NCBI GenBank assembly: GCA_900088475.1
Contig: FLMG01000116.1
Span: forward strand, 11,302-75,301
From: Hyphochytrium catenoides
Taxonomy: Eukaryota; Protista; Hyphochytriomycota
Reading direction: 5' to 3'
Length of the DNA stretch: 64,000 bases
A program made the position numbers and the translations under genes. The notes under the pieces were generated by a model that saw only the letters and a list, made by a program, of their open reading frames with translations, was not told the DNA's origin and did no database searches. Shown here piece after piece: positions 6,515-27,300 of the stretch; positions within the stretch are counted from its first letter, which is position 1; every line of letters starts with the position of its first letter.

Positions 6515-8269
6515 ATGAATTTTGGCTTCGGTCGTGCAAAGGAGCCGTCCCAAGCTCCTACTGGCGGGTCCGATGCTGCTCCGCCTCCTCCTCCGCCACC
6601 GCCTGAGAAAAAGAGCGGCGGCTCACCATGGCACAATTTTGACCCTTCTGGTCTGGAGCGGGCAGCCAAAGCAGCCAGAGAGCTCGACCAGTCTCGCAAC
6701 GCTAAGGCTGCTGCGGATATTGCCTTAGAACAGGAGCGGTCCAAGCAGATTGAGTACCAAGCGAAAGTGAAGGAACAGGAAGCTGCTTACGAAGCTTACA
6801 AAGCACAGAGGGTGCAGAAAGAATATGAGGAAAAGCGAAAGACTATAGATTATGAGACGCAGCAGCACCAGCAGCGCGCTCGTTACCAAGATGAACTCAA
6901 GCGCAAGCAATATGCTGACCAGCTAGCAGCGCAAAAATACATGAAGGAGCAGGAACTGAAGAAGCAGGAAGAGATGATCGCCAGACAAGAAGCCCTCCGA
7001 CGCAAGACTTTGGATCATGAAGCTGAGCTCAGGCAGCGTACTGAGATGGCCAGAGTTGCAGCCGAGACAGAGGGTCGCATCAAACAGGAACGGATGAACC
7101 ACGATCTTCACCTTGAGCAAGCCCGTCTGAGAGCTAAGGAACAGCGTGAGACCGTGCTCGAGTCCATCAGACTCATGGGTCAAACGGTAGGCAAAGGCGT
7201 TGATGAATTTTTAGGTGATAGTCAGAAGATGACTTCCGCGGTTGCGACTGTCACCTTTGTTGCCCTCGGTATTTATGCTGCCAAAGTGGGAACGAACGTG
7301 ACCGGTCGGTACATTGAAGCTCGTCTAGGGAAGCCGTCTCTGGTGAGGGAGACTTCCCGCCGCAATATGCTCCAGACTCTTGGCAACCCAGTCCCAGCCA
7401 TCAAGCGGATGTTTGCGAAGGCTGATGATGCCCTGCAGGGCGTAGTGTTGGCTTCAGACATCAACCATAAGCTCCAAGTTATTGCTCGTTCAACATTCAA
7501 TACCAAGAAGAACCGGGCACCGTTCAGAAACGTTCTATTTTATGGTCCTCCTGGTACCGGAAAAACACTTTTCGCCAAGCGTCTGGCGAAGCACTCAGGC
7601 CTAGAGTACGCTGTACTTACCGGTGGAGATGTGGCGCCACTGGGCAGACAAGGCGTCACAGAGATCCATAAGCTCTTCGACTGGGCGGAGTCTAGTCGTC
7701 GTGGCCTCCTACTGTTTGTAGATGAGGCTGATGCATTTCTGCAAAAGAGAAGCAATCAGACCATGAGCGAGGACCTGCGAAACGCTCTCAACGCTTTTCT
7801 TTTCCGGACAGGAGAAGCAAGCAACAAATTTATGGTTGTCTTCGCGACAAATGAGCCTGAGCAGTTTGACTGGGCCATCAATGATAGAATTGACGAGATG
7901 GTTGCATTCAGAGTCCCAGGTCTTGATGAAAGAATCCGGATGCTCGGCATGTACTTCGAGAAGTATGTTCTAACGCCACCTACTAGGTGGTCTAAGAAGA
8001 TTATAGTTGATTCAGAGATCAACATGGAGAAGTTGCAAACTGTGGCGGAGAAGCTTGAAGGGTTTTCTGGTAGAGAGATCTCCAAGCTAGCTATTGCCCT
8101 GCAGGCTGAGGCCTACGGTTCTAGTGACGCAAGACTGACTGAGGAGATGCTGGACTCTGTCGTGGCAGATCATATGCGTCAGCACGAACAGAAGCAGATC
8201 TGGTACAAGGCTGACCATGTGGGTCACGAACACATGCACAAGCCTGATGCCATGAAACTCGTCACCTAA
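6515..8269 (+). CDS. ATAD3: ATPase family AAA domain-containing protein 3 (single coding exon, 584 aa)
   Basis: Pro-rich N-terminus, FDPSGLERAAKAAREL, coiled coil, TM segment, RLGKPSLVRETSR, Walker A GPPGTGKT, Walker B LLFVDEADAFL, DWAINDRIDEMV, GFSGREISKL. Confidence 0.96.
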   Translation: MNFGFGRAKEPSQAPTGGSDAAPPPPPPPPEKKSGGSPWHNFDPSGLERAAKAARELDQSRNAKAAADIALEQERSKQIEYQAKVKEQEAAYEAYKAQRVQKEYEEKRKTIDYETQQHQQRARYQDELKRKQYADQLAAQKYMKEQELKKQEEMIARQEALRRKTLDHEAELRQRTEMARVAAETEGRIKQERMNHDLHLEQARLRAKEQRETVLESIRLMGQTVGKGVDEFLGDSQKMTSAVATVTFVALGIYAAKVGTNVTGRYIEARLGKPSLVRETSRRNMLQTLGNPVPAIKRMFAKADDALQGVVLASDINHKLQVIARSTFNTKKNRAPFRNVLFYGPPGTGKTLFAKRLAKHSGLEYAVLTGGDVAPLGRQGVTEIHKLFDWAESSRRGLLLFVDEADAFLQKRSNQTMSEDLRNALNAFLFRTGEASNKFMVVFATNEPEQFDWAINDRIDEMVAFRVPGLDERIRMLGMYFEKYVLTPPTRWSKKIIVDSEINMEKLQTVAEKLEGFSGREISKLAIALQAEAYGSSDARLTEEMLDSVVADHMRQHEQKQIWYKADHVGHEHMHKPDAMKLVT

Positions 8270-9095: not shown

Positions 9096-9889
9096 TTAGA
9101 AGCGGAGCTTCTTGAAGAAGTACTGTACGCCACTGGCCTTCTTCTCGGATTTAGTGGCGGTCTGGTTCAGGTAGCTGCATCAAGGAAGAGATTGTGGGAT
9201 TAGGAAAAGATAGGCACTCTCGAGCTAATAACTGGCTATAAGGAAAACCTACCGGTCCTCGAAAACCTTCTTGATCTTGGCACGAGTCTCCTTTCTGGTC
9301 TCTGGAGCGGTAAGAGCCGCGTCATCGACCACCTTCTTGAGGTCGATGTCCACAGCGTATCTGGTGGGCATCAGGTGGTTGTAGTTGACCGACTTAATGA
9401 AGGGCTTAACCTTTGAGCGCTTCTTGATCTTGTTCTTGCCCATGCTGCGGGTCACCTGGCGAGGGTATCTGTCGATGCCAGCCACTGCATTGAGAAGAAG
9501 ACGGAAGAGTGAATATCGACCATTGCGTACTCTCCACCTAACTGAGATGTAACACTCTTACCAATAGCGTGGCCAAACTTCCTCTCGCTGTTTCCCTCAT
9601 CATAGGTCTTGATTACGACAGCCTTGCGGCCGGCGAATCTGCCCTGAAGGACGATGACAACCTTTCCACTCTTGATGCTGGGAAGTGAGACAGTATTAGA
9701 AAACGTACATGTGTAATTTGAAGCTCAATGACCGAGACATTAGCATTCGACAGCCACCACAACAAGCTACAGAGGCCTCTATGTAGCATCTACAACTGTC
9801 TTGCTCTGACAGCTAGACAGCTTGTGAAAGCTCTCTCTCTCTATACCCCGACATCTCTAAGAATGTAGAGGCCAAACTTACATGCCCAT
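9096..9889 (-). CDS. RPL27: 60S ribosomal protein eL27; 4 exons, with an 8-nt first coding exon (9889-9882)
   Basis: Spliced MGIIKSGKVVIVLQGRFAGRKAV...AGIDRYPRQVTRSMGK...SKVKPFIKSVNYNHLMPTRY...YFFKKLRF*. Confidence 0.96.
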
Positions 9890-10976: not shown

Positions 10977-13768
10977 TTAGCAGCCCTTCGGGGGAAAGGG
11001 TATAATAGTGTAGGACCTGCGATAGTGAGGAGGATGGCGGAACCTGCAGTACCCTCTCTTCTGCATGGAAGTGCACCAGCCTTCCTCTGTGAATTCCACG
11101 CAGTCTTCTATTACATTGCCTCCTCGGTCTTTGTCTTTGGCCCAACCGGCACTTTCGCTCTCAACAGTTATTCCTCGACCCCCACCGCTAACGCTACTTT
11201 TCTCCGGGTACTTCCTGACCTTTTCTTCTATTCGTGCACGTAAGCCGCTCCACTTAACGTGTCTACAGGGATACCTGAGTGTGCAGATATGGCACCGCGG
11301 GAACTGATTTGCCATCTCAACAAGGTTCATGGGAATCAGGGGTAGCGGCTGTGCAAAGTGCTGCAATTGAAGGAGAGATCCAAAGAGCAATACAACGAAG
11401 GTAAGAGAAGGTCATAGCTGAGGGCTTGGCGTCTTCCATCGCCTTTCTCTACCTCTAAAACAATATAAGATCTAAATAAACCTAACCTGGTACTTCTTGC
11501 TTTCCTCTCTCAACCCTTCCCGACCCAGGCGATGTTGGAATGTACCGCTACCCCGTCACACCGTTATCTCTTGATCCCTGCTTCCTTCTTATCGCTTCTC
11601 TCTACCTCCGCTCGTAGCCATCTCCAGGCGACTTATCATGTCCTATGAGGAGGCATACCTTCAACACATTCTCCAGCGAAAGGAACCAGTACTTTCGCCA
11701 CACTTCATACATTGTGTGTAGAACTAAGGAAAAGTCTTCTCCGCCATTGAGGAGAATCTGCTCCAGTCCCTCGCGGGTGTAACCGACCTAAACGCTGTAA
11801 GTCAGCTTAATAGGACAAAAAGGTACGGAGCCAGTATGTGCTTCAAAGACGGCAAGAGAGGGAGAGAGAGAGAGAGATGGGGGACCGTGATGGAAGAGTA
11901 CAGAAAGATCAGGCGAAAGGAAAGCCGCACTAACCCAGGAGTAATGAAGAAAGGGGAAGAGAAGCTCGACAAAACCTTCTCTTGCACACAGAACTCTAAA
12001 GCTCTTCGCACCCTGCTTTCTTCTCCCATGGCCTTCATCTCAAAGGCGTGGGCCATTTGCTAGAGGAAAGACACCAGTAGGACAGTTTCGTCAACTGAGA
12101 TAGACCAAGTCGAGAAAGAGGCAGACTTCCATTGTGGAGCTAAAGCCGCAAGCTCTAAAATGTACCTTCACTTTTGTTGCCACTTAATGCTTGCCGTCAC
12201 TACCACTCCGCTCACTTACTGACCAGTTTTCTCTTCCCTTCTCTCATTGACCTTTGGCTGCCCTCTCCTCGAAGCAACTCGTAACTCTTACCCGAATTGC
12301 GCTAAGAATGAGTTTGACATCATAGCATAGCATAATGAACTTCGTCTTCGGAATGTTAGCCTCAAGAAGCTTCCGAAGGAGCTGCTGGGAATGGGGGACC
12401 AGTCTTGGGTATGGAGTTTGAGAGAAAAGGGTGGTAAAAGGGATGAGAGCGGCAGCACCGTCAAAGTCGTTGCCATGAGGGCAAAAGAAGGACCAAGTAA
12501 GAAGGACGACAGCAGTGCGAGCAATGCAGCCGCCAGGTGGTATTGGTACGGTGCAATGCAGTGCTGAACGATGAAGGCTAGGGATGGACAAGGAAGAAGC
12601 TACAACCGCATCCCATACGTAGTGGCTAGCGGGGATAGAGTGGGACTGATGTAAAGCGCACAGGAAGGGATGGAGTGTGCGTGGAGGCGAAGAGGAGAGA
12701 GTCACATACGATATTGCTCAGAACAGCCACGTTCAAGCAATAACTCCAGAAATAGTATTGCACGGTTCATCTTCTCACCTGCAGAGGCCGTCAATGATGA
12801 CCAGCTGCGTCGTCTGTTCTGGAGCTTGACCTTGTCCTTGCCCTTTCTTTGAAAGAAACTCTTCGAGACGCGGCGCCACTTCGCTTTGAAAAGAAATCCT
12901 AGGGAGCGCAATGAGGCTGCTTAGCTCTTCTACGTCTTTGCGTTCCTTTCTTCACTCTTTCCTTCTTTGATCCAAATCAGCTTCTCCTCTTCTCTTTCAT
13001 CTTCTCCCCCTTTCTCCCATCTCGCTCTTCTCCATGTCGCACTCTCTCTCTCTCTTCTGACTTTTCTGCTTCCTCCCTGAGGAGCGCTAGAGAATGGTTA
13101 TTTTCGAGGTGTAACACTTGTGTCGTCCATACTTTTCTTTATGCGGTATTGTCAAAGTCAGACAGTTTTCCTCCGGAAGGTTCAATTGACGCCGGATGCA
13201 AGCAGCAAGAGCAGACTTTCCAGTGCCTTTGGAGCCCTAAGACAGTGAGAAATAAGAGCACTTGAGACTCCGGGCTGAGGCAGAGTACGACAATGATGAA
13301 GAGGTGAAATGATTGAAAGTAGTAGTGGGATCGAGGGAAAGCGTTGTATAAAGGTGGAGAGAATGGAGGGAAAACACACGGAAATCCTGAGATGGGTAGC
13401 TGAAGGAGAAGCGGGGATGAGAACTAAAAGAGGCAAGCGACAGAGAAGCTTAGAGAGGATCAATGGAATGTGAGATCGAGGGAAGGACTTCACCTGGAGA
13501 AGGACGTAGTATTTGTATGGGTTCTCGCTCTGCTCAGAGTCAAAGGGTGGCTCCTCCGTGGTACTCCACGTCTTCACAACTTCCTCCAGCTGGGGACGAA
13601 GTTTATCCAAATCTTTAAATTGTGAGAGCTGTCGCGGCGCACCGACAGAGCCGAACAAAGATCCATAGAGCGTAGACATTGAAAACGAGGAGGAGGGAGG
13701 GGGGACAGAAGAGTGCCATAAGTGAGATGGATTGAGCCCTAATGAGAGTGTAAGATTAAGGCTAAAGA

Positions 13769-13799
<31 letters not shown>

Positions 13800-14338
13800 A
13801 AAGTCAGGGAACAGCGCCTGGCTATTGACGACAAGTTCGTGCATTGAAAGGAGATGCTAGGAGTTCCTTTGGACGGTAGATAGAGAGAGATAGAATACTG
13901 ACTGGGTGAGAGAGCCTGGGAAAGTGTGTTTGAGGACACAAAGAGCAAGAGATGGGGAGAGGAATACCGAGGGAGATTGTGCGTGTGAGGGAGAGAGACA
14001 CAGAGAGAGCGACAGGAGAGGAGAAAGGCAAAGGAGAAGCCAGGGGACGGAATTACGTGGAGTGAGAGGGCCAGGAGGGAGAAAAAGCGGGACGGGATCT
14101 CGTCCAAGACACTCACCGTCTCAGGTATGGCTTTCTCCAGCCAGTTCTCCTGCTTCCAGCGATATCCTTCCGCTGCTTCACCTGACGTACCCTCTGCTTT
14201 AGCTACATCACTCTCTTTCTTCTCTCTCTCAGGAGCTCTAGGCTTTGTAACCTTATAGCTTGTCCATATACGTGTCCATCTCTCCTTCTCCCTTTCCGCC
14301 TCGAGGAGTGTAGCACTTCTAGACCTATCTTTCCCCAT
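10977..14338 (-). CDS. Divergent RFC2/Rfc4-like clamp-loader AAA+ protein (predicted inactive) fused to C-terminal CxxC-x4-CxH and CCCH-type zinc fingers; ~429 aa, 8 coding exons
   Basis: Phase-consistent exons 14338-14117, 13628-13494, 13236-13133, 12898-12779, 12403-12292, 12059-11976, 11787-11659 and 11360-10977. They give NWLEKAIPETL (RFC box II WxEKYRP), VLLQGSKGTGKS (Walker A), LVIIDGLCRLVPHSQQLLRKLLE (Walker B, AQQALRR..E), TKFIMLCY, ILSAIRQMA, RALEFCVQEKVGYTREGLEQI...FLSLENVLKHFAQPLP (RFC2 lid). More coding exons may lie upstream, up to ~15269. Confidence 0.8.
13764..13800. repeat. (GA)n microsatellite in an intron of the RFC-like gene (CT on the sense strand)
   Basis: gagagagagagaga...gagagagaa is directly visible. 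Confidence 0.85.
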
Positions 14339-15350: not shown

Positions 15351-18300
15351 ATGGTCTTCGAGGCTGCACTGGTTGCCGCGTTGCGGCGGTTCTTGGGCTC
15401 AGTAGTTGACATTGACCTGCAGCAGCTCCAGCTTTCTTTATGGACCGGTAGATATGTTCATTCCTTATGTCTTCTTTCCTCTCTGTTAGCGCCTTCTGTC
15501 TTCCCGGAACGTTATACAACCAACCTTCGTTCTAGCTTATGCCTGCCCGACTAGATACCTTTATTCTTTCGCTTGTGGCTCTTCCACCTCATCACCCTCT
15601 CTTCTTTATTCAGGAGACCTAGCGCTGGAGAACGTGGTCCTGAAAGGGGATCTGTTGGCAAAGTTTCCAATCCCTCTGTCTTTCCTTCAAGGTAGTACGA
15701 GATGAGTTTACTCTTCTCTATTAATCCAACATGCTCTATGGTTGTTGCGGGAGCTCTATTTAGCTCTCCGTCCAAACATTTGCTTCCGACCTGCCACTTA
15801 AGGAGGAAGTTTGTCTGCTCTGTGGGTCCCACGGTCTAAAGTATCGGCGTTCCAAAAAGCTTGCTCCGGAGATGAAAGCCATCTGCGTCTCCATCCCACT
15901 GTCAAATTTACTGCTAATAGCTCTGCACTTCTTCTGCGGTCTTTTCTCTGGGTGTCCGCTTCTCCTCCTTTACTTACACTCTGCCCTTGCTATAGACTTC
16001 CTGCTAGTATTCGCGTTCGTCATCGGACATCACCTTTTTTCGACTAAGATTTTCCTTTGTAGGCTCTATAGGGCATCTTCGTCTTGAGATCCCATGGCTC
16101 TCACTCTGGAAGAGTCCTGTCGTTATCACTGCTGAGAAAGTTAGAATAGAGCTGGAGACATCGGCCTCTTCCACTCGCACGTCGCCCGTGCCCCCAAGCC
16201 CTGCAAAAGTAAGAGTACTCTTTCAGCTAAAGTGACATGTACAAGGAAGGGTAGAAAGTGTAGGGGTTAGCGCGCTAGAGTGGATCTTCTTACAGCAGCC
16301 TGAAATCAACAAACACAATATTCACTAGGGGTCGAAGCTACCGGGAGAGGATGATACTATGCCTGGAGGTTAGTCTCTAACACTTGTATGTGCGCGTTAG
16401 GTTACTCTTTCCGTCGCTTTATTTGGCTATCCTTTCTCTATCTTCGCCTCTGAACATTGACGTTCCTCGTAAGAGTTGCACTTCTATCGTAAGCTTCTTA
16501 TAAAGTCAGTTTATTAATCCGTCGAACTTCCTTCCATCGCCAGCTCCGCCTGGCTATCTCAACCGCCTGATTAGACATGTTATCGAAAACATCAGGTTGG
16601 AGGTGAAAGATGTGTCTATCAGTCTCTTTCAAGGCGGGTTATTGGTGACCGAAGAGGTAACGTTCGACAGCTATTCGCCTCTTGTCTCCCTCTGTAAATC
16701 ATAGACTTACGTTCAACTATTGCTTCTTTGTTTATATGCTTCTTCCTTTTTATGCGACGTCAATGTTCTAACTGGATGGCTTGCAGGTTAGCGGTCTGGC
16801 TTTAGTATGGGACTCGTTACGCGTCTATAAAACTGAGGACGGCATTCAATCAAAAAAGGTGGGTTGGCTTCCTCCTCTCTTTTTTGAGTGCCTTTATTGA
16901 TAAAAAGTGCCTGGGTTCTTCTTGATTTGTTCTCCAGATAGCTTCGGTACGAGATATTGGTCTCGTCTGGAGACAACCAGAAGCTAGTGATGCTGGGACA
17001 GACTTTATACTTTATCCTACCACCATTCTTTTAGAGGTAAGGACGGCTTGAGGGTAGAAGAAATAAGTTGATGAAAATATCTGAGAGACAAACCCATGCT
17101 TGGAGTATCAGCGGACCTAGGAATGAGTAACTTACTGGTTCGCCGCAGAACCTCGACGTGCTGGTTATGCTTAGGTGTGGTCGGAAGAGGCTGGTAGATG
17201 GTGAAGATAGTCCTAAACGACAGTGAGGCAGGGTATCGCGTCACTCTCTGCTGCCTTAACTCTTCAGTCTTCCTTTACCTTTAGAGCACAACCAACAAGA
17301 AAGAAGACCTTGAGGGAGGAGACCAGACCCAAATGAGAAACATTACTATGTCAGTCAATGCAGAAGAAAAGCTAAGTTCCAAACCAATGCGAGCGAAAGT
17401 CAGCGAAGAGCAGCTTCTAGACCTGGCAAACCTCGTGGAGGAGCTTTGTAGCAGTTTGCGCCAAGAAGATGATGGAGAGGAAGAGGAAAGTGAGGAGGCG
17501 ACTTTTTCCCCACCAAGGCCTCGGAGTGTCCTTGAAGAGTCTTGGCTCCAGCTGGACCTATGGACTCACTTCTTCTCCTCTATTGGCGCTCCTAGTCCTA
17601 ATAATAAAGGACGGGAGGACATAGCCTCTCAGGTCTCGAATGATGCATTGAATGGAGAAGGCCTTGACGAAGGCGATCTGGCTATTGAGACTAGCTTCAA
17701 AACTAGGGATCTGGAGTTCTGTCTGTCCATTGTTTGCGGACTTGAGCTGTCTCTTTCTTGTGGTACATTGCGCTGCAAGGAGGGCGACCAAATGCCGGAC
17801 GAGGAAATGAAGAAGAGCTGCAGAAAACTTAACAAAGAGCGAATACTGCTTGCTAAATTTGGATCCTTCCACCTTTCCTACCTGGATTCCTCTCTGCTTT
17901 CATCGTTCTCGATGAGCATTATGTCTCTCTCTGTTACTGAAGACGGATCGCGTCCTTTATTCCACACGAGGAGTGAGGAGTTTGAGGCAGTCATGGCCCT
18001 GTTTTGGGAAACGCCCAAGCCTCTCTCGCCTCATAGAAGAGAAGCTTCAGCAAGCCTCTATCTAGGACCAAAGTACAAGGCATCGTTGTCTGCTTTCACA
18101 ATGACTATTGATCCTCTTGTCCTGGAAGTACTCTCTCTGCTGTGTGACATTTCCCTTAGAGTAATGGCACCTTCTCCTCAACCATCGTTACGACAGCCAT
18201 CTTTTTCCTCTACACCGTCTCAGTCTTCCTTGTCGCCTATTTCTTCCCTGGGATCTCTGGAAATTTCTCTGGGAGATATGACCTTCTATTTTCCTGTTAG

Positions 18301-21300
18301 TGTATCAGAAGCCAACACAACCAGATACGCCATATCCCTCGAGGAGATCCGAGTAATTTCGGACAAAGAGTGTCAAAATGGAGTTGAAGCAGAGGAAAAA
18401 CTCGAGGGGCAAGGGAGCATACGAGGGCTTCAGATCAAGATTGCGTCCTGCAGCGTCTTCCACCAGAAGTGGAGCTCAGAGCGACGCACCTGGGAGGCAA
18501 AAACCAGTCTCATAACAGGCCTGTCGCCCTTGGTCCTGACACTGAGAGAGAACCTCACAGGCCCTCATTCCCCGTCACCAAACTCTTCTCCTTCTCCTTC
18601 TGAGACGGACGGGGTCTGTCAGCATGTCTTTGGATCAAGCTCTTCTTCACTACCTTCCTTGGCTACAGAGGAGCAGCAAAGAATCAATCTCACGGCTCCA
18701 GAGGTCTTTGCAGTATCTCTCTCCGTCATGCTCTCAGACGTGACTCTTCATTGCACGGATGAGCAGTTATGGCAAATATCTTGGCTGATAGGCTCTTTTG
18801 TCGCTTTCCTTCCAACAAAGGGCCTAAAGCGGAAAGGAGGGCCAAAACAGCCGAAGGGTCTGGATATATGTCAGACATACGGGACTTGCTTCGACCTCTG
18901 CAAAAAAGAAGTAATTTGCGCTGTGTCTCACCTTAAAGTGCACCTCTCTGTATCTGAGACCTTCGCTTGGGCGGAGGATGTATGCGCTTATAAGCTCTCT
19001 TCCTTACCTACACATCACTCTTCCTCCGTCAGCTTCATTTCGCCCCTTCAATATGAGCTTGAGCTTGGAGGACTGCAATGGCGAGGAACCGATTGCTCTC
19101 ATGTTCAGGAAACAGAGGTGAAAATAGATTTTTTAAGCTTGTGTGCTAAGAAAGAGGCATCATCTGGAGGTATGGCTAAGCCGGGGCTAAAGAGAGAGGG
19201 AGGGAGAGTGTCGAACACTGATATTGATGAGAAATCTCACACTGGTCAAGGCCGAAATGTTGCCGGGCGATGTCTGCTGTCGTTGGGCTCCCTATCAGGT
19301 CCTGGTCTTCGCGTTCGAGGCTCAAAGTATCCGCGAAGGACTTTCAGTCAAGAACAGGGTCTAACGGTTGCTGTCGGTACAGTCTTTGATTCCCAGGTGA
19401 ATCTGGGCGATCTGAGAGTTGGATTGGAGCCAGAGGTCACTTTTAACCTTTGCAAAATTGTTGCAAGATCGTTGAGCCTAGCAGAGCTCAGCACAAAGGT
19501 CAGAGTCAGGAGAAGCGAGAAAGCCCGATCCACGAGGAAGAGAAAAGTGAAACATCTCAGTAGTCAGTCTTCGGCAGGCGAAAGGTTCACATGTGAGCGA
19601 AACCCCTCGAGAGTTTCCGCATCCCTCTCTGTGGTCTGCTCCTCGACTGACATCCGGGCACTGGTAGGCGAGCGACAGCTATGCGCAGTCACTGGAAGTA
19701 GGCTTAGCGGCACTCTTCTCGTTTATGATGGGATCAGCTGTTGTTCAGGCTGTGTTGCTTTCGAAGGGCGAGGGAGCTGGGAGGAGATTGAGTTGGTAGA
19801 CCTTTCCGGCGTCAATGAGTTACATCGCAACATCATCTCCTGGAGGGGAGCCGCCAGAGAGGAGGACAAGCACTATCCGATGCCATCCATAGACTTCTCC
19901 ATTTCTTCTTTCTGCTCTCATGCATCCGACTTTCCCGGGTATTCTCCTCTGATCTGTGTTCGGGCGGGTAACTTCTCCCACAAGGTTCTGTACCGCTTCT
20001 ATCGGGAAATAGGGAACTTTGTAGGGTTGAGATTGCTGCCAACCGTCCTCTGCTTTGGTCAAACAGATGGAGAGGAGGAGAGAGTTTTGAGAACCATATT
20101 AGAGAAGCTTGGAGCTTGCGACCTGGTACTTAGAGGCTGGCCAGAGGGCTTATCTATGGAGAAGGGCCCATCAGGCAGGACGATCTGCAATACTGAATCT
20201 CTTCTCACATCGCAGCCTTCCCCCAAAATTGATCTTCTCTTCCACGACGTTCTAGTGTATCTTGTCGAGGGGTCCAGAGCCCCAGACTCTCTCATATTCT
20301 CCATCCAGAGGCTTGAGGCTTGGACTTGTGGAGCATTTGGAGATACAAAGTCAAAGTTTCTTCTTCAGGGACATTTCCCTGACGAAGATCTAGATATTTT
20401 TCAGGAGCCAGACAATAATCCTGACGACTTCAGATATTACCTTCAGAAGATTAAAGAAGGCTATCGGCGAGAAAGAAGGGTCCGGATGCAAAGAAGGTTC
20501 GAGCTATCAACCCTCCTCGCAGACTTGCTGGCATCAAACAAGAGGACAGAGATCGAAGGGGAGCAAGAGACCGAAGAGCAAGACGGAGAGGCCTTAGCTC
20601 AAGACAGCACAGGAAGATGCGACTTGGATCAGCAGATATGTGCGCTCGAAGAAGCTCTAGAGAATCTGAATCTGGAAATCAAAAGTCTAACGGAACAAAT
20701 AAATGCGGACGGAGAAAACCATGATTCTTCCCTTCTATCGCCTCAACTCCTCGACCCAAAGCGAGACGTCTTCATTGAGGAAGAGGAGGATGACAACGAT
20801 GAAGGCTTCTACGATGCTGACGATGAGGAGCAAGGTCCGGCAAATCTAAGGAAAGAGGAAAACAGGATGGAGTTTCTAGCATCGCGCGTAGAAATATTAT
20901 CTGCCGCATCCTCTTCGGTTATTTCTCAGCTATCTTGTATAGCCGGGTGGGTGCATTTTGCACAAACCCTCCGGCAGCCAGACCAGGAGGAGTCGATGTC
21001 TTCTTTCTCTTCCAATGCATGCAAGCAGGGCATACACTCTCCAATTCTGCACACAGGCCGAGAGGAGAGCATCTCCTGCTTGTCGTCCCCAGCGATAATG
21101 TCCAGGACATCCTCACCCGGCTTGACAGATCTTGAACTTTCGTCTTCTTCCTTCTCATCCCCGAGGTCCTTTGGGAGAAGGGCAACCTCTTCCTCTTGTC
21201 CTCGCCAGGGACCATTGTCCCAGTTTCCGTCCAACAAAAAGAGTACCCCGCTGATTCTCTCTTTTAGCGTCGGCCACTTTCCCCTGTGTCTTACACCTCA

Positions 21301-24300
21301 ACAGTTGGAGACTCTCTTGGGCTTCATCATGAGGAACTTAAAGGAGTTCCCACATCTATGTCCTGATCCTCCCTTATCTCTCCTTTTCTGCACCCTTTGC
21401 AAGGGGCACCACTACGCTCACCAAGATTGCAATGCTCCATGGTTCCTTCTTTCTCTCTATTTTCCGTCTGCTACACTAAGTCTCGTAGAAGAGTACCCAG
21501 GTAGGGAAGCTCAGGACGGGGAAAACAAAGCAGGTGAAGGCATGAGCGGGCCCTTCCCGCCGTTTGGGGAGCTGCAGTTCGAGCAGTTGGAGATTTTAGT
21601 GCAGCAGAACAGCAACGATGTCGCCCAGTTAGCTGTGTCTGCAAATTACGTACGGGTACAGAGTCGAGCCCTAAACGTCCCACAAGGCGATACGAGTATT
21701 GCTGATTGGAGAGAAGTCTTTTCTCCTCTTACGTCAAACCGGAGACAGTTGTTCTATCGGCAACTCTCGTCATGGACCTCATGTTCCCACTCAATTCATG
21801 TCAATGACTCTTGCGTCAGCATCCTCCCGCCGCTTATGGTCCCTCTATCTCTCTTCTTTACAATCGCTCTAAAAAATGTTCTAGACAAAGCGAGAGAGGA
21901 ACAAGGGCCGTATGTCGTTCCTGCTACGCTTTTCAAAGACAAGGAGACAGAGAGGACCAGGAACAACCAGACTCATGACGAAGGGGGCTCTAGCGTAAGA
22001 GGCTGGCCAAACTTCGATCTAACCTTGGACTTATTCATAGACAACACGCTCTTCTGCTTGTATCAAGATCCTCAAGGAACCTCCTCGAGGTAAATGAGAG
22101 GGGCGTTAGAGGCATAGTGACCGTTTGATCGGAGTAGGCCGACAAGAGACACCAGGAGAGAATCATCACCGATACACCCGGACTGGGTCTGAGTGATAAC
22201 TCAGTTACAAAGCAATAGCTTGAGGCGGTCAAGACGTAGAGATTGTATCATATGCTCGCCCTAACCTCTTTTTTCGGCTGCTGTCTCTTTGATCCCCTAA
22301 GGGTACTTTGTATCCTTTCTTGCTTAGACTTACAGCAGCAATGGCTGGATGAGGTGAAGCAAAGCAACCACTTTGCCATCAAACAGAAGAAGATATTTTT
22401 CTCTTCTTTCCCAGATCTGCAGGTAACTCGGGTCACTACTTTTCCTGCCTATATGACCTCCGTGTTGCCGCTTCGGTATGGTATGGCCCTAAATTCGTTG
22501 TCTGGCGGGTGACGTCGAGCTCTCACACTCTTCAACTTTTCTTCTACACCCTCTTTGACTTTTCTTCTAACACACCTTCTTTGTAGATCGAGCAGTCAGT
22601 CGCATTAGCAAATGAGTTCTCCATCGCCTGCGACTATGAAATTAATGTCAGCCGAAAGGACGGCCTCGCAAGTGAGGGCATGAACGAGAAGGAAGGAGAG
22701 GCTCAAATGGTGGCCATTGAGAAGTTTTCCTTCCTTCTCCACCCACTGAAGCTGGCTCTGTCTTACCGCGACTGTCTGCAATTGGTAGATATCCTTGATT
22801 CCGTAAACTTATCTCTGTCGCTTGTGACACAAGACACAGATGAAAAAATCCAGAGAGGCGCCGCCGATCCTTCTCCCCTTCCTTGTCAAGAGGACCCTAC
22901 AGATATCAGCATTATGCAGCAGCAGACCTTGGGGCAGGTTGGTGACATCCGCCTGATACTGCTGGAGGACGAAAGAGATGTTCCTCTGTTAGAGCTCTTT
23001 GTAGAGAGTATAGGGATAGAAAGCGGCAGTTGTGGAGGAAACACTGCCCTTTCCCTTGATGCATCAGCCTCACTCTCTGCCTTTAACTCACGGAATAATG
23101 GCTGGGAGCCGCTGCTCGAGAAGACGGCCTTCCAGCTTAGGTTGGCTGCTAGCAACAGGGCAGAAGATCCAGTTCAACTTGTTCTCTCTGTTCCCTCGGT
23201 TATGAACCTCAACCTCACACAAACATGGGCCGACACTCTCCCTCGCCTCCTATCAAATCTGAGGTCCGACGAATCAATTATTTCTCCGTCTCTTTCCAGC
23301 GGTGTCCATATCGAGAACTCAACAGGCCTTCCCATAGAGTTTTGCCTGAGGCAGGGAATTCGTGACGTAATCCGCGGGAGATTGGAACACGATCAAAGTG
23401 CTGACGCGATCTTGCGTGGCCAGGAAGAGGATTTAAAAAGGAAGAGGAGATCGGCCGCCATTGACTCTCTTTTACCTTCAGCACCTCTATTCCAGCAAGA
23501 GGCGGCTGCTTCTAAGCAGACCCTTGCCATTTGGCTTAACGACCGAGAGTGGGGAACAGCTTCTCCTGTTGCTATCAGCAACACTGGCAAATATGTCTTA
23601 CCTGTCCGGCGAGCAAAAGTGAGACGGCAAGACGACCTCCAAGAGGTGGCTCAGGGAAGGAGTCTTAACCTCTTTCCCGGCACGTTAGTGCTGGATATCA
23701 GCCTCAATCAGGGTGACGGGACTAAGGTCCTGAAGATACTGTCTCCTCTAGTCATTTCTAATCAGACAGACATTCCCCTGCAGCTTTGGGCTTACTCACC
23801 GCAAGGGGGAGGGCGCGTCGAAGAGTGGACGGTGGATGCAGGCGAGTCTTCCACAGCCCCTCTTTCTGTCCTCCACGTAGAAAACAAGGTCAGCATCAGA
23901 CCCACAAACTCCACTGACTGGGGACCCTTACTCAGCAGCTTGAGCCAGTTGCGGGGCGAGAAGATACCTGGTAGCCGTTATCAAACGGTAGCAGTCTGCC
24001 CCGTAGCCGCAGGGAGGGAAGAGGATAAAGCAAGAAATAACACAGAGGAGGAAAGGCAGTTCATTTGTTCAGCTCTCCCTTCCTGGTGCTGTGTAGCTGT
24101 GGCTGTCGAAAGCGCGCTGGAAGAGGTCCCGATAGCTGATGGTCGTCTAACCTCGAAGATAGCTTTGACTTCCATGGATGGAAGGGACGGTACTGCCAAG
24201 AGGGACAGAACGCCTAAAATAAGGCAAAAGCAGAAGGAAAGCAAGATCGTATCAAAAACGAGTCTTACATCAGTTTTCTCCACCAGTCGCCCATCTCTCT

Positions 24301-27300
24301 TTACATTGGTCCTTCTACCTCCCGTTCAACTCATCAATGCTCTTCCCTTCGTTGTCAGTTACCGATTCTGCTGCCATGAGAGGCATCTGCTCCTGGCGGA
24401 AGGAATAGTGGACGTAGGGAAAACGTTGCAATTGTGTCAAGTTGAGATGGGAACTGTTCTTTCACTTTCCATATCTCTTCCTGGTTATGACTGGAGCGAG
24501 TTTACTCCCATTACCTCTCCTGCACGACTACATGGGTTCCCAGACTCAGTAGGCAAAAGTAGGGATCTCGAAGACCGGAAAGCCTATAAGATTACTCTTA
24601 GAAGGCGCGTAGAGAGCCATTTAGACGGGAGCGTAAGAGAGGATGAGCTGTCTCTCCTTCTCAAGAGAGAAGGAAGGCTTCTTCGTCTAGTTGCCCCGAT
24701 CTGGCTTGTCAATCGAACCTCTCTCCCTGTTGAGTTCAAATCAGGATCGCAGATTACTCCTATGACTCCTTCTAGAAGAGCTTCCAGACGCGTACTCGAG
24801 AGAGAAAGGTCAGACAGGAACCGGAATGGAAGACAAAAATTGTCGGCTGCACTTGTTTCCAAGGGCAGTATGAAGCGCGTTTCTGATCAGGCCCCTTCTA
24901 TTCTCATGGTCGTGGTGGAGCAAGCAGAGTACTTGCCTGATATGGCGCTGGTAGGGCGACAGGACCCCTTTGTTCGAGTTTCTCTCTTCTTACCCGCTTT
25001 CCGTCCCTCCAAAGTTCAATCTGCCCTGGAAAAGGGGATGAGACCCCGAATTCTCTATAAGGCTGAGACCCGTCCCTGTGTCGCAGGGGGTTCTAGGCCT
25101 CGGTGGGGGCCTCAGCATAACTGCAGCCTCCTCATACCTCTCTCTGGAGAGCGCGATGTCGTGAACCAGGGTAAACTTCTGGTGGAGGTTCTCCATCGAA
25201 CAATCGTGGGAGAAGAGCTGCTAGGATGGTTGCAGCTAAGTTTGGCACAGATAGGAAGTTCTACGGGCGACATGGACCAACCCCACTGGTACTCTTTGTC
25301 TCCCTCTCCTGCTCATCAAAATAGGGGAACAACGGCAAGAATTGTCCTTTCTATCCACATCAGCTCTAGTCAGCGGCCTCCGATCAATACGAGTGAGGGG
25401 AAAATAGGGCCAGGAAGTAGCATCTCTCTCTCAGAAAGAGTAGGGGCGGATGGAGGTAGCATGCAAGACGAAGGGAAAGAAGCAGCTATGCCATCCTCCG
25501 CAGAAGCGACAAGACATCGGATCTCCCTATACCTGGCTCATCATATACAGAATCGTCCACCTAGGAACATCCTTATCTCCAGAGGCATCCTCACACCTCT
25601 TTTGTCGCCCACGATAGCTAAGCGGAGCGCTTTCCTTGCCGCCAAACTAGATTTGCGACCAAGCAAGAGGAACCTTGAGGAGAGAGGCATTCTTGTCAGG
25701 AGTCGACCGCTCATCTTCCTCCGCATCTATTTGCCTCATAACCGCTTTCATTATGTCTCTCTGTTTCTACCAGAGGATACCGTTCTTGCCGAGGCAGTTG
25801 AGCGGGCGCTGATGGTCTGTGGCCTGAGTTTCAGTAGGCCCGACCTCTATGTCTGCTTTGAAATCACCACAAAAAGTTGGCCTCTTTCCCGAGACCCCAC
25901 AAAACAAACACAGCTGACAGCCATGGTTGCCCAATTCACCGCTTTGGAACCTGCTGTTCCAGTGTCCGAGGATCATCTTCCGGCCATGCGGTGCGTGGGT
26001 AGGGAGTATGAACTGACGTTGCCTTTAGCAATGTGTAATGTGGAGAACGGGCTGCTGTTAATGCATAAGGCGGGTATTGGGCCTTTGCTTAATCGCTCTT
26101 CATCCACAGCTCTTGCCTTGCCAATGTCATGTCCCCTCATGCTGGAGCAAGATACAGACAGTAGCGAGAACTTTGCAGTGAAGGAGGTAGTCCTCTTCCC
26201 TCTTGGCAATGAGGAAGAAAATAAGGCCAGGCTATCTGTCCGCCTTCCAGATACGCCATGGAGCCGCCCATTTCCTCTACTCTCGGAAGCAGGGGTGCTC
26301 ACTCTCTCGCAGAGACCAATACCAGCAGGTATGGAGGTTGTCCAGCGTACAGAAGAACTGCAGCCAAGCCTCAGAAAGTACCAGTTCGGCGTCCAAACAA
26401 CAGAGGGAGAGGGCATATTCTCAGACTCTCTAATAGTGTCCTTTATGCCCCGCTACCTTCTTCGCAATAACACGTCGCAGGAGATACGTCTACGGCAGTA
26501 TGGATCTCGACTCATTTCCTTCATGAAGCCCGGCCAGGCCCAACCATTCCATTGGGACGACAGGACAAAGGAGGTAAGGAAAGGAGTACGTGATAAGTAA
26601 TTCCTGCAACAGTGGCAAACGTTGAGTCCTTGAGTGCTCAGTCGATCTTGTGAAACTCTTTGGGGGGCATCCGCCACAAATGGCGTTCGTGGCTCAACCT
26701 GCTCTCCTTAAACGATCGACTTGCATGTCCTCGTCCTGACTGACAACTGGTTGCCCAGGAGTCGCTTTCAGTTACTGTAGGCAAGAAAGTCTGGCAGTGG
26801 AGCGGGCACTTTTCCCTTGATGGTGTGGGCAGTATATTCCTCCTTTTGAGACCGGTGCATCCCACGGCCCCTACCTCTGCACCGGGGTCGTTCAGCCTTC
26901 TACTTCAAGTGAGAAGAGAGGTAGCTGGGAGCTGTCTCCTCGTCTCTTTCGAGCTCGGGGATGTACGCTTTCCACCATATCGCATAGATAACAAGACGTC
27001 ATATCATCTCAAGTATAAGCAATCCAGGTGAGCGGGCTTGGGAGCTGCCGATTTAAACTCCGCAGCTGCTCCAATTACTGATGAATGGCGCTACGCCTCC
27101 CATCAAACAGTCTTGTCTCTAGCATCCACAGCCCATCACTACCCCTCGGCTACCGATTAGTTCCGGTTCAGCTCCTTCTTCATACCAAAAAGCATTCTCT
27201 AAGACTCTTAACTCACCTAACCTCCCTCGTTCCCCTTCTGAATCTTTCCGCCGCTGGTATTCACCGTCGCTGAAGCTCTTCTCCGGATGATACTGGACCG

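What the first reader, a model, noticed from the sequence alone, without database searches (positions are those of the whole stretch)
10977..14338. Hidden clamp-loader offshoot: RFC2/Rfc4-derived pseudo-ATPase whose collar is replaced by zinc fingers
Seen: eight phase-consistent exons, only fragments of which appear in the ORF track, rebuild a protein colinear with RFC small subunits, from box II (NWLEKAIPETL) through the lid (FCVQEKVGYTREGLEQI...ENVLK...QPLP; cf. RFC2 EKVPYTDDGLEAI...ENVFKVCDQPHP). Walker A is kept (GSKGTGKS). Walker B DEAD is DGLC, sensor-1 Asn is Tyr (MLCY), the SRC arginine finger is QMA, and GDMR is EDFS. Established: RFC subunits need these residues for ATP hydrolysis and use the C-terminal collar to assemble the pentamer. 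Here homology stops just where the collar begins, and Cys/His fingers follow. Inference: a catalytically dead, non-pentameric RFC derivative repurposed as an adaptor, perhaps linking PCNA/9-1-1 or RFC to RNA/DNA. I do not recall such a family being described.
Basis: partly seen in the sequence, partly recalled or inferred. Interest (0 to 1): 0.85.

Follow-up and report, generated by a model that had tools for sequence, protein, structure and literature searches.

The report
Dead clamp-loader module with zinc fingers
This is a real eight-exon gene whose protein joins a catalytically disabled copy of the DNA clamp-loader subunit RFC2 (without the part that builds the five-subunit ring) to an RNA-type zinc-finger module; the same unnamed, unstudied protein family occurs in oomycetes.

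Summary
I had no RNA evidence, but homology supports the model. The spliced protein aligns colinearly, across all seven junctions, with 550-570-aa "hypothetical / C3H1-type domain" proteins of Phytophthora, Pythium, Lagenidium and Albugo. Its front and back halves each match that family's profile on their own.

A profile of the family finds human RFC2 and then yeast Rfc4 as best solved-structure sequences. An AlphaFold model of a Phytophthora member gives the same ranking by fold. RFC domains I and II are present. The collar is absent in every member.

Walker B Glu and sensor 1 are lost family-wide. The arginine finger is lost in the window protein and in most relatives. The window protein keeps an intact P-loop. 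The tail holds a C-x2-C-x6-C-x-H knuckle and a C-x8-C-x8-C-x3-H finger related to Muscleblind fingers.

So this is a conserved, undescribed pseudo-ATPase family, not a decaying duplicate. Its function is untested, and the PCNA/RFC-adaptor idea has no direct support. Other agents of this scan read the genome as Hyphochytrium catenoides, an oomycete relative. That fits, but I did not verify it.

The parts
14117..14338 (-). Exon 1 (aa 1-74): start codon, a basic/acidic N-terminus carrying the family motif W-x3-W...KPR-x-P, and RFC box II (NWLEKAIPET).
   Evidence: ATG, donor ACG|GTGAGT. Searches align it with oomycete W..GFW...KPR.P and EW.KR.VP.
13494..13628 (-). Exon 2 (aa 75-119): the helix before the P-loop, with a 10-aa insertion relative to oomycetes.
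   Evidence: AG|CTC...CAG|GTGAAG, phase 0.
13133..13236 (-). Exon 3 (aa 120-154): intact Walker A, GSKGTGKS.
   Evidence: One search gives weak P-loop Pfam hits (AAA_16, AAA_22). One search gives the motif table.
12779..12898 (-). Exon 4 (aa 154-194): Walker B remnant LVIIDGLC. The Asp is kept and the catalytic Glu is replaced by Gly.
12292..12403 (-). Exon 5 (aa 194-231): LVPHSQQ (RFC box 'T..AQQAL') and the sensor-1 strand FIMLCY (Asn->Tyr). Its AAG acceptor is validated by homology of the first residues.
11976..12059 (-). Exon 6 (aa 232-259): QMA in place of the SRC arginine finger, and the start of the lid domain.
11659..11787 (-). Exon 7 (aa 260-302): lid domain (VGYTREGLEQI...EDFS...ENVLK), the stretch most like RFC2.
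   Evidence: the only PDB sequence found with this exon alone is human RFC2 (43/43 colinear, E 1.8); lid against the family, E 5e-4 at Z = 1.8e9.
10977..11360 (-). Exon 8 (aa 303-429 plus TAA): remnant of the first collar helix (QPLPLIPMNLVEM), the zinc module, a degenerate second knuckle (RRSYTIIPFPPKGC) and the stop.
   Evidence: In the AF2 model of this exon the two zinc sub-domains reach pLDDT 79-91 and the linker is disordered.
11259..11294 (-). Zinc knuckle CHICTLRYPCRH (C-x2-C-x6-C-x-H), the family signature RC..CT[LI]..PC.H.
   Evidence: invariant R, C, C, T, L, C, H in 26 modules.
11034..11102 (-). CCCH finger with C-x8-C-x8-C-x3-H spacing.
   Evidence: The family profile hits Muscleblind fingers in the PDB at E 3e-4. 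Pfam zf-CCCH matches 18 of 26 family modules but not the window's own.

Best explanation
The locus is an intact, functional gene for a stand-alone pseudo-ATPase. It has a clamp-loader AAA+ module (RFC domains I and II, nearest to the RFC2/Rfc4 'B' subunit). This module has lost the catalytic Walker B glutamate, the sensor-1 asparagine, the SRC arginine finger, the sensor-2 arginine and the whole collar domain that assembles RFC pentamers. It is fused to a basic zinc module, made of one C-x2-C-x6-C-x-H knuckle and one Muscleblind-like CCCH finger. It belongs to an unnamed family present in oomycetes and at least one further protist lineage. Shown: gene structure, family membership, fold class, motif states, absence of the collar. 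Inferred: (1) It cannot hydrolyse ATP. The window version, with an intact GxxxxGKS P-loop, a Walker B Asp and box II, may still hold a nucleotide as a structural ligand. (2) Without a collar it does not sit in an RFC-type pentamer. (3) The CCCH/knuckle module binds single-stranded nucleic acid, most likely RNA, and the dead AAA+ module serves as a protein-docking or duplex-contacting platform. The protein would then act as an RNA-directed adaptor, not a motor. It would be monomeric here and probably dimeric in oomycetes, whose proteins add a long coiled-coil hairpin.
For: Gene model. Colinear homology across all junctions. Both halves are independently significant against the oomycete profile. 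A second isolate (DNA run X1) keeps the frame and all splice sites. All 3 of its indels lie in introns, and it has 3 synonymous against 4 non-synonymous exon SNPs, pN/pS 0.37. Clamp-loader identity: the family profile scores human RFC2 at E 1.6e-11, yeast Rfc4 at 3e-7, archaeal RFC small subunit at 4e-5 and pol III gamma/tau at about 1e-2, and no other RFC subunit is listed up to E 10. The AF2 model of Phytophthora P0030 has pLDDT 75-94 over the AAA+ and lid part. Foldseek against the PDB puts 6vvo_B (RFC2) and yeast chain B on top, and archaeal RFC domains 1-2 reach TM 0.81-0.83 at rmsd 3.3-3.5. The top nine Swiss-Prot hits all belong to the RFC2/Rfc4 orthogroup. Dead motifs are family-wide. 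There is no collar: the lid is followed by a short low-complexity linker and then the knuckle in every member. Zinc module: invariant ligands in 26 modules, relation to Muscleblind fingers, Pfam zf-CCCH in 18 of 26, folded sub-domains in the window's own exon, pI 9.3. Independence of the zinc module: it occurs in tandem without an AAA part in other protists.
Against: No transcript evidence for this organism could be obtained. No functional datum exists for any family member. The window protein sits on a very long branch and lacks the second knuckle and the coiled coil of the oomycete proteins, so it could be a relaxed or partly degenerated member. pN/pS is not significantly below 1 (p 0.18). 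RNA binding is inferred only from finger type. The window's own finger does not reach any Pfam threshold, and Foldseek matches of the zinc model are not significant. The RFC2 affinity of the window protein itself is transitive (window to family to RFC2), apart from the weak exon-7 hit.
Confidence: 0.6

Rival explanations
1. It still works inside the clamp-loader world. The dead RFC2-like module docks onto PCNA, 9-1-1 or the AAA+ face of an RFC or RFC-like complex, as a decoy or regulator of the B position, and the fingers bring it to RNA-containing structures such as primers or R-loops.
For: The nearest relatives are specifically the B-subunit orthogroup rather than generic AAA+. Box II, the P-loop and the 'PS.QQ' box, which shape the nucleotide pocket and the inter-subunit face, are conserved.
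Against: No conserved PIP or APIM motif. The arginine finger and SRC helix, which make the inter-subunit and DNA contacts in RFC, are not conserved. The collar, the main assembly interface, is absent. No interaction data exist.
Confidence: 0.2
2. It is a decaying duplicate of RFC2 (a pseudogene or a gene under relaxed constraint), and its apparent fingers are chance Cys/His clusters.
For: A very long branch and unusual composition. Loss of the second knuckle and coiled coil relative to oomycetes. pN/pS not significantly below 1.
Against: The frame is intact over eight exons with canonical splice sites. The same dead motifs and the same zinc signature are conserved in oomycetes and in the L001 lineage, so the losses are ancient and were followed by long retention. 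Every invariant zinc ligand of the knuckle and finger is kept. The second isolate has no frameshift or stop.
Confidence: 0.04
3. It is a gene-model artefact: the exons belong to a longer or different gene, or this is the organism's canonical RFC2 misread.
For: There is no RNA evidence. One acceptor is a weak AAG (exon 5).
Against: Start, order and spacing match full-length oomycete proteins from about 20 aa before the first conserved Trp to the CCCH finger. The residues just after the AAG acceptor (LVPHSQQ) are family-conserved. A double stop (TAATAA) is followed by the eL27 gene. The motif losses are in the DNA, not in the model.
Confidence: 0.04
4. The family acts in RNA metabolism with no remaining link to replication. 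The AAA+ shell would be only a folded scaffold or nucleotide sensor for a CCCH RNA-binding protein, for instance in mRNA regulation in zoosporic stages.
For: The zinc module exists on its own in other protists and is Muscleblind-like. All named carriers are zoosporic pseudofungi.
Against: No expression or localisation data were found. This overlaps with the best explanation and differs only in denying any clamp-related partner.
Confidence: 0.12

Closest known systems
RFC2 (human) / Rfc4 (yeast), the 'B' small subunit of replication factor C
   Same: Same fold for AAA+ domain I and the lid domain II. It is the best hit by sequence profile and by structure. Box II, the P-loop, the 'T..AQQ' box and the lid sequence (V/I)(G/P)YT..GLE...ENV.K are shared.
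   Different: No Walker B Glu, no sensor-1 Asn, no SRC arginine finger, no GDMR sensor 2 and no collar domain III. It has extra N-terminal W...W...KPR.P motifs and a C-terminal zinc module (plus a coiled coil in oomycetes).
Oomycete 'C3H1-type domain-containing / hypothetical' proteins (e.g. Phytophthora cactorum PC118_g808 = P0030, P. infestans PInf_019804, Pythium brassicae TYZ56902.1, Albugo laibachii F0W211)
   Same: Same architecture and signature motifs from the N-terminal Trp motif to the CCCH finger. About 25% identity over 350 residues.
   Different: The window protein is shorter (429 against 550-570 aa). Its second knuckle (RC..HTLPLPC.HC) has decayed to RRSYTIIPFPPKGC and the C-terminal coiled-coil hairpin is absent. 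It alone keeps a canonical GxxxxGKS P-loop.
Inactive clamp-loader subunits (E. coli delta' HolB; eukaryotic Rfc5/RFC3 'E' subunit)
   Same: AAA+ clamp-loader modules that do not hydrolyse ATP and act as structural parts. PMC1636414 (abstract) states that only gamma has ATPase activity. The rest is my own knowledge.
   Different: Those keep the collar and sit in the pentamer. This family has no collar and carries nucleic-acid-type fingers.
WRNIP1 / Mgs1
   Same: A clamp-loader-like AAA+ module combined with a zinc finger. It appears among the fold matches (rank 17).
   Different: From my own knowledge, WRNIP1 is an active ATPase with an N-terminal ubiquitin-binding UBZ finger and its own oligomerisation domain. 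Here the finger is a C-terminal CCCH type and the ATPase is dead.
Muscleblind (MBNL1/2) CCCH zinc fingers
   Same: The family's central finger matches MBNL fingers, including the 'C(R)FAHP...ID' continuation (E 3e-4).
   Different: The spacing is C-x8-C-x8-C-x3-H instead of C-x7-C-x6-C-x3-H. It is a single finger flanked by CxxC...CxH knuckles rather than tandem pairs. RNA binding is untested.

Membership tests
RFC small subunit (clamp-loader AAA+ subunit) | AAA+ domain I plus lid domain II of clamp-loader type | tested here: met
   The family profile matches RFC2 at E 1.6e-11. The AF2 model of orthologue P0030 matches RFC chains, with TM 0.81-0.83 to archaeal RFC domains 1-2. The window matches the family at E 2e-10 for residues 1-302. 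This is transitive for the window itself.
RFC small subunit (clamp-loader AAA+ subunit) | Walker A GxxxxGK[ST] | tested here: met
   GSKGTGKS in exon 3. It is not met in the oomycete and L001 relatives, which have GK followed by A/M/H/R.
RFC small subunit (clamp-loader AAA+ subunit) | Walker B hhhhDE(A/C)D with catalytic Glu | tested here: not met
   IIDGLC in the window; IIER, VVER, IVDN and VIRD in relatives.
RFC small subunit (clamp-loader AAA+ subunit) | Sensor-1 Asn and SRC arginine finger | tested here: not met
   N->Y and SRC->QMA in the window. Sensor 1 is Arg in oomycetes. The Arg finger is kept only in the Pythium/Lagenidium-type members.
RFC small subunit (clamp-loader AAA+ subunit) | Sensor-2 GDxR in the lid | tested here: not met
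   EDFS aligns with GDMR.
RFC small subunit (clamp-loader AAA+ subunit) | C-terminal collar (domain III) that assembles the pentamer | tested here: not met
   Homology ends at QPLPLIPMNLVEM. There is no collar-like frame in intron 7 or downstream. All relatives go from the lid through a short linker to the knuckle.
RFC2/Rfc4 orthogroup specifically | Groups with RFC2/Rfc4 rather than other RFC subunits in a phylogeny | not tested
   Only ranking evidence is available: RFC2 and then Rfc4 are the top sequence hits, with no other eukaryotic small subunit up to E 10, and the top nine Swiss-Prot fold hits are all in this orthogroup. No RFC1-5 sequences could be obtained for a tree.
CCCH (C3H1) zinc finger | Three Cys and one His with C-x(7-8)-C-x(4-6)-C-x3-H spacing, recognised by the curated profile | tested here: inconclusive
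   The window has C-x8-C-x8-C-x3-H, so the middle spacer is longer than canonical. Its own sequence has no Pfam hit up to E 1. 18 of 26 family modules hit zf-CCCH (best E 1e-4; P0008 scores 17.7 bits against a 20.5-bit cut-off). The family profile hits MBNL fingers at E 3e-4.
New family: RFC2-like pseudo-ATPase with knuckle and CCCH module (oomycete 'C3H1-type domain' proteins) | N-terminal W...W...KPR.P, box II, degenerate AAA+, lid 'G(Y/F)TR(E/D)GLE', knuckle RC..CT[LI]..PC.H, C-x8-C-x8-C-x3-H finger, in this order | tested here: met
New family: RFC2-like pseudo-ATPase with knuckle and CCCH module (oomycete 'C3H1-type domain' proteins) | Second knuckle RC..HTLPLPC.HC and C-terminal coiled-coil hairpin with KWG.AK | tested here: not met
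   The window ends 18 residues after the finger with a degenerate RRSYTIIPFPPKGC. No further exon lies before the eL27 gene.

The most novel reading that the evidence does not exclude
Pseudofungi (hyphochytrids and oomycetes), and perhaps other stramenopiles, may carry an undescribed sixth type of RFC-derived protein. It would be a collarless, nucleotide-binding but non-hydrolysing copy of the B subunit that uses a Muscleblind-like finger to recognise RNA (for instance primers, R-loops or specific transcripts). It would couple that recognition to sliding clamps or clamp loaders, giving a direct RNA input into clamp handling that is unknown in animals, fungi and plants.
Probability: 0.12. Interest if true: 0.85.

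Novelty: new variant of a known kind. Interest (0 to 1): 0.6.

Why it matters
Clamp-loader AAA+ modules are known almost only as parts of collar-held pentamers: RFC, Rad17/Rad24-, Ctf18- and Elg1/ATAD5-RFC, and the bacterial gamma complex. A conserved family has kept the RFC2-type module for a long time while discarding both catalysis and the collar, and has attached RNA-type fingers. This shows that the module can be reused as a non-enzymatic platform and gives AAA+ evolution a clean example of a pseudo-enzyme. The family occurs in Phytophthora and other destructive plant and animal pathogens and has no counterpart found here in plants or animals, so its function is worth testing. No paper, Pfam family or informative database name covers it. 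In practice, the gene may be easy to miss or mis-model by automatic annotation: the longest exon encodes 127 aa and the AAA+ part gets no Pfam hit.

Tried and rejected
- RNA evidence: no RNA run was listed for the locus. The 'any' search gave only DNA runs of the same organism and three tiny runs that hold nothing, so splicing remains unconfirmed by transcripts.
- Pfam on single exons gave only weak P-loop hits. The PDB sequence search with exons 1, 5 and 8 alone found nothing. The pieces are too short and diverged.
- The spliced 429-aa protein has no reference, so it could not be given to the structure, Pfam, PDB or large-database tools. I left those steps out and worked through orthologues and in-script alignments.
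- An exhaustive phmmer of the last exon against 1.8e9 representatives gave only 8 weak hits and no self or near-self hit. The exact look-up of the neighbouring ATAD3-like ORF found nothing. It appears that this genome's proteins are not in the collections.
- Three word-based homology searches never left the oomycetes, and AFDB clusters hold one family cluster.
- Aligning the single exons together with full-length relatives in the alignment tool misplaced the short pieces (A3), so that alignment was discarded.
- My first guess of an apicomplexan origin (GA microsatellites, 50% GC) was dropped. No coccidian homologue appeared, the eL27 fragment is less like alveolate than like opisthokont proteins in the PDB, and other agents' notes point to Hyphochytrium.
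- Foldseek on the zinc-module model gave only non-significant CCCH tandem-finger matches.
- A PIP-box/APIM scan found nothing conserved.
- Literature searches for the architecture and for the oomycete locus tags found nothing. An 'RFC-like protein' in a Plasmodium preprint is unrelated.
Full report
**Observation**

The minus strand of 10977-14338 was read directly. The eight exons were joined in a script. The exons are 14338-14117, 13628-13494, 13236-13133, 12898-12779, 12403-12292, 12059-11976, 11787-11659 and 11360-10977.

- All seven introns (188-488 nt) begin GT and end AG.
- The phases fit.
- The product is 429 aa and ends in TAATAA.

**Is the gene model real?**

I could get no transcript evidence. 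No RNA run was listed. The only holders are DNA runs of the same coded organism. Homology supplies the test instead.

An exhaustive phmmer of the last exon against 1.8 billion representative proteins gave eight weak hits. These led to a family of 'hypothetical / C3H1-type domain-containing' proteins of 490-570 aa in Phytophthora, Pythium, Globisporangium, Lagenidium, Nothophytophthora and Albugo.

- The spliced model aligns with Phytophthora cactorum P0030 in one colinear segment: model 60-412 to P0030 56-409, 25% identity, 117 bits.
- In a multiple alignment, no junction coincides with a break.
- The first residues after the one weak acceptor (AAG before exon 5) are the family-conserved LVPHSQQ.
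- With E-values scaled to the whole 1.8e9-protein library, residues 1-302 score 2e-10 and residues 303-429 score 3e-9 against a profile made only from oomycete proteins.

Both halves, and hence the fusion, are therefore shared with the family.

A second isolate, laid on the locus as assembled DNA contigs, gives further support.

- It keeps every splice site and the frame.
- All three of its indels lie in introns.
- It has 17 intron SNPs and 7 exon SNPs (3 synonymous, 4 non-synonymous).
- pN/pS is 0.37. This is in the direction of constraint but not significant (p 0.18).

**What the front half is**

Pfam sees nothing in the AAA+ part of the family. A profile of six oomycete members against all PDB sequences gives this ranking:

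| PDB sequence | E-value |
|---|---|
| Human RFC2 | 1.6e-11 |
| Yeast Rfc4 | 3e-7 |
| Archaeal RFC small subunit | 4e-5 |
| Bacterial gamma/tau | about 1e-2 |

No other eukaryotic RFC subunit appears up to E 10.

An AlphaFold2 model of P0030 is confident over residues 31-290 (pLDDT 75-94). Fold searches with it agree with the sequence ranking.

- Foldseek puts human RFC chain B (RFC2) and yeast chain B (Rfc4) first in the PDB.
- Archaeal RFC domains 1-2 superpose at TM 0.81-0.83 and rmsd 3.3-3.5 Å.
- In Swiss-Prot, the first nine hits, from rice, rat, Arabidopsis, human, mouse, Dictyostelium, S. pombe, Drosophila and S. cerevisiae, are all the RFC2(human)/Rfc4(yeast) orthologue.
- In AFDB clusters, the only non-RFC top hit is the family's own cluster.
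- For the window itself, exon 7 alone retrieves human RFC2 as its single PDB hit. It is colinear over all 43 residues, though at E 1.8.

No tree was possible, because no RFC sequences could be obtained.

**Motif states**

I chained the printed alignments: window to family, family to RFC2, and exon 7 to RFC2.

| RFC2 feature | RFC2 | Window |
|---|---|---|
| Walker A | GPPGTGKT | GSKGTGKS (intact) |
| Walker B | DEAD | DGLC |
| Sensor 1 | LACN | MLCY |
| Arginine finger | SRC | QMA |
| Sensor 2 | GDMR | EDFS |

Across the family, the catalytic Glu and sensor-1 Asn are absent everywhere. The P-loop Ser/Thr is lost in every member except the window protein. The arginine finger survives only in the Pythium/Lagenidium-type members. 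The ATPase was therefore disabled before these lineages split, and the protein was retained afterwards.

**No collar**

- RFC homology ends at QPLPLIPMNLVEM, which corresponds to the first collar helix (PHPLLVKEMI in RFC2).
- Intron 7 has no collar-like frame.
- The stop is followed by an eL27 ribosomal protein gene on the same strand.
- All oomycete proteins pass from the lid through a short low-complexity linker straight to the zinc knuckle.

**The back half**

The window encodes CHICTLRYPCRH (11294-11259) and, 52 residues later, a C-x8-C-x8-C-x3-H finger (11102-11034).

- In an alignment of 26 such modules, the ligands and the R-C..C-T-L motif are invariant.
- A profile of this alignment hits Muscleblind CCCH fingers in the PDB (E 3e-4), including the residues after the His.
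- Pfam zf-CCCH matches 18 of 26 modules, but not the window's own.
- AlphaFold2 of the window's last exon folds both sub-domains (pLDDT 79-91), joined by a disordered linker.
- Foldseek on this small model is not significant.
- The module is basic, with pI 9.3.

Oomycete proteins continue with a second knuckle (RC..HTLPLPC.HC) and a confident coiled-coil hairpin. The window protein has only a decayed trace of the knuckle (RRSYTIIPFPPKGC) and then stops.

**Range of the family**

Besides the oomycetes, I found two further lineages.

- A genomic metagenome contig (L001, 53% GC) encodes a more divergent member with the same order of parts. It has box II 'EW.AK', 'GTEGAGKR', 'VVVIRDFC', a lid 'VGYDREGIE', knuckle, finger and knuckle.
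- AT-rich contigs (L002/L003) encode proteins with two zinc modules and no AAA+ part.

In a tree of family members, the window protein lies outside the oomycetes on a very long branch. Word-based searches, AFDB clusters and a metagenome scan found nothing further.

**Organism**

I could not identify it myself. The exact look-up of a neighbouring ORF failed. The eL27 fragment only shows that it is not alveolate-like.

Notes of other agents in this scan read the genome as Hyphochytrium catenoides, because the known HcCCR channelrhodopsin gene is in it. One note called it a chytrid. A hyphochytrid, the sister group of oomycetes, fits three things:

- the family's distribution;
- the position of the window protein outside the oomycetes;
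- the published gene statistics of 3.6 introns per gene and mean intron length 208 bp (PMC5795050).

I treat the identification as probable but not verified here. The finding itself was not noted before in this scan.

**Mechanism**

Shown:

- a conserved stand-alone protein with a clamp-loader AAA+ shell that lacks the hydrolysis machinery and the pentamer collar;
- a fused knuckle and CCCH module.

Inferred:

- It has no ATPase activity. The window version may still bind nucleotide, since the P-loop, the Walker B Asp and box II are kept.
- It has no place in an RFC-type pentamer.
- The zinc module binds single-stranded nucleic acid, most likely RNA.
- The AAA+ shell acts as a docking platform.

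No PIP or APIM motif is conserved, and the SRC helix is degenerate.

I put about 0.85 on the identity statement and 0.3 or less on any specific partner. The stated confidence of 0.6 is for the combined explanation.

**Novelty**

Database names are all 'hypothetical', 'uncharacterized' or 'C3H1-type domain-containing'. No Pfam family covers the AAA+ part. Full-text searches for the architecture and for locus tags found nothing.

This is a new variant of a known kind: a clamp-loader-derived pseudo-ATPase with a new architecture, restricted as far as seen to pseudofungi and a few unplaced protists.

Noticed in passing
window 9252-9724 (-): A multi-exon eL27 (RPL27e) ribosomal protein gene lies directly downstream of the finding. 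Among PDB sequences, its C-terminal exon scores best with fungal and animal eL27 (77-81 bits) and lower with Plasmodium, Tetrahymena and Toxoplasma (58-61 bits).
   Followed up: partly
window 6515-8269 (+): A single-exon 584-aa ORF of the ATAD3 family (AAA plus ATAD3_N by the atlas search). No gene with exactly this product is on record in the public gene collection.
   Followed up: partly
window 11849-11886, 13751-13808, 13977: GA/CT microsatellites sit inside introns of the gene. A second isolate (DNA run X1) carries a 20-nt microsatellite insertion at 13977 and a cluster of 12 SNPs plus a 3-nt insertion in 12183-12280 (intron 5).
   Followed up: partly
L002:105-1523, L003:105-1523 (P0021); P0001: AT-rich (31% GC) metagenome contigs encode proteins with two tandem copies of the same knuckle and C-x8-C-x8-C-x3-H module but no AAA+ part. 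The second copy ends 'HPP.YANH.IRLP', like the window's degenerate tail 'HPPHYRRSYTIIPFP'.
   Followed up: partly
L001:2-2464: A genomic metagenome contig (53% GC) holds a divergent full-architecture member. It is interrupted by a short GTGAGT intron after 'ELWLR' and carries a roughly 90-aa Ala-rich insertion between Walker A and Walker B. A third ORF (1889-2464) of unknown nature follows.
   Followed up: partly
P0004, P0006 (hits): Ala/Pro-rich proteins with three C-x8-C-x8-C-x3-H fingers, each followed by a conserved 'HPDV(I/L).DK(I/V)(K/R)QGK' tail. This is the same unusual finger spacing in an unrelated architecture.
   Followed up: no
window 17333-26600 (+): Very long open frames (1586 and 1306 aa) upstream on the other strand. 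A first-stage note calls the region a VPS13 gene with inserted modules. I did not examine it.
   Followed up: no
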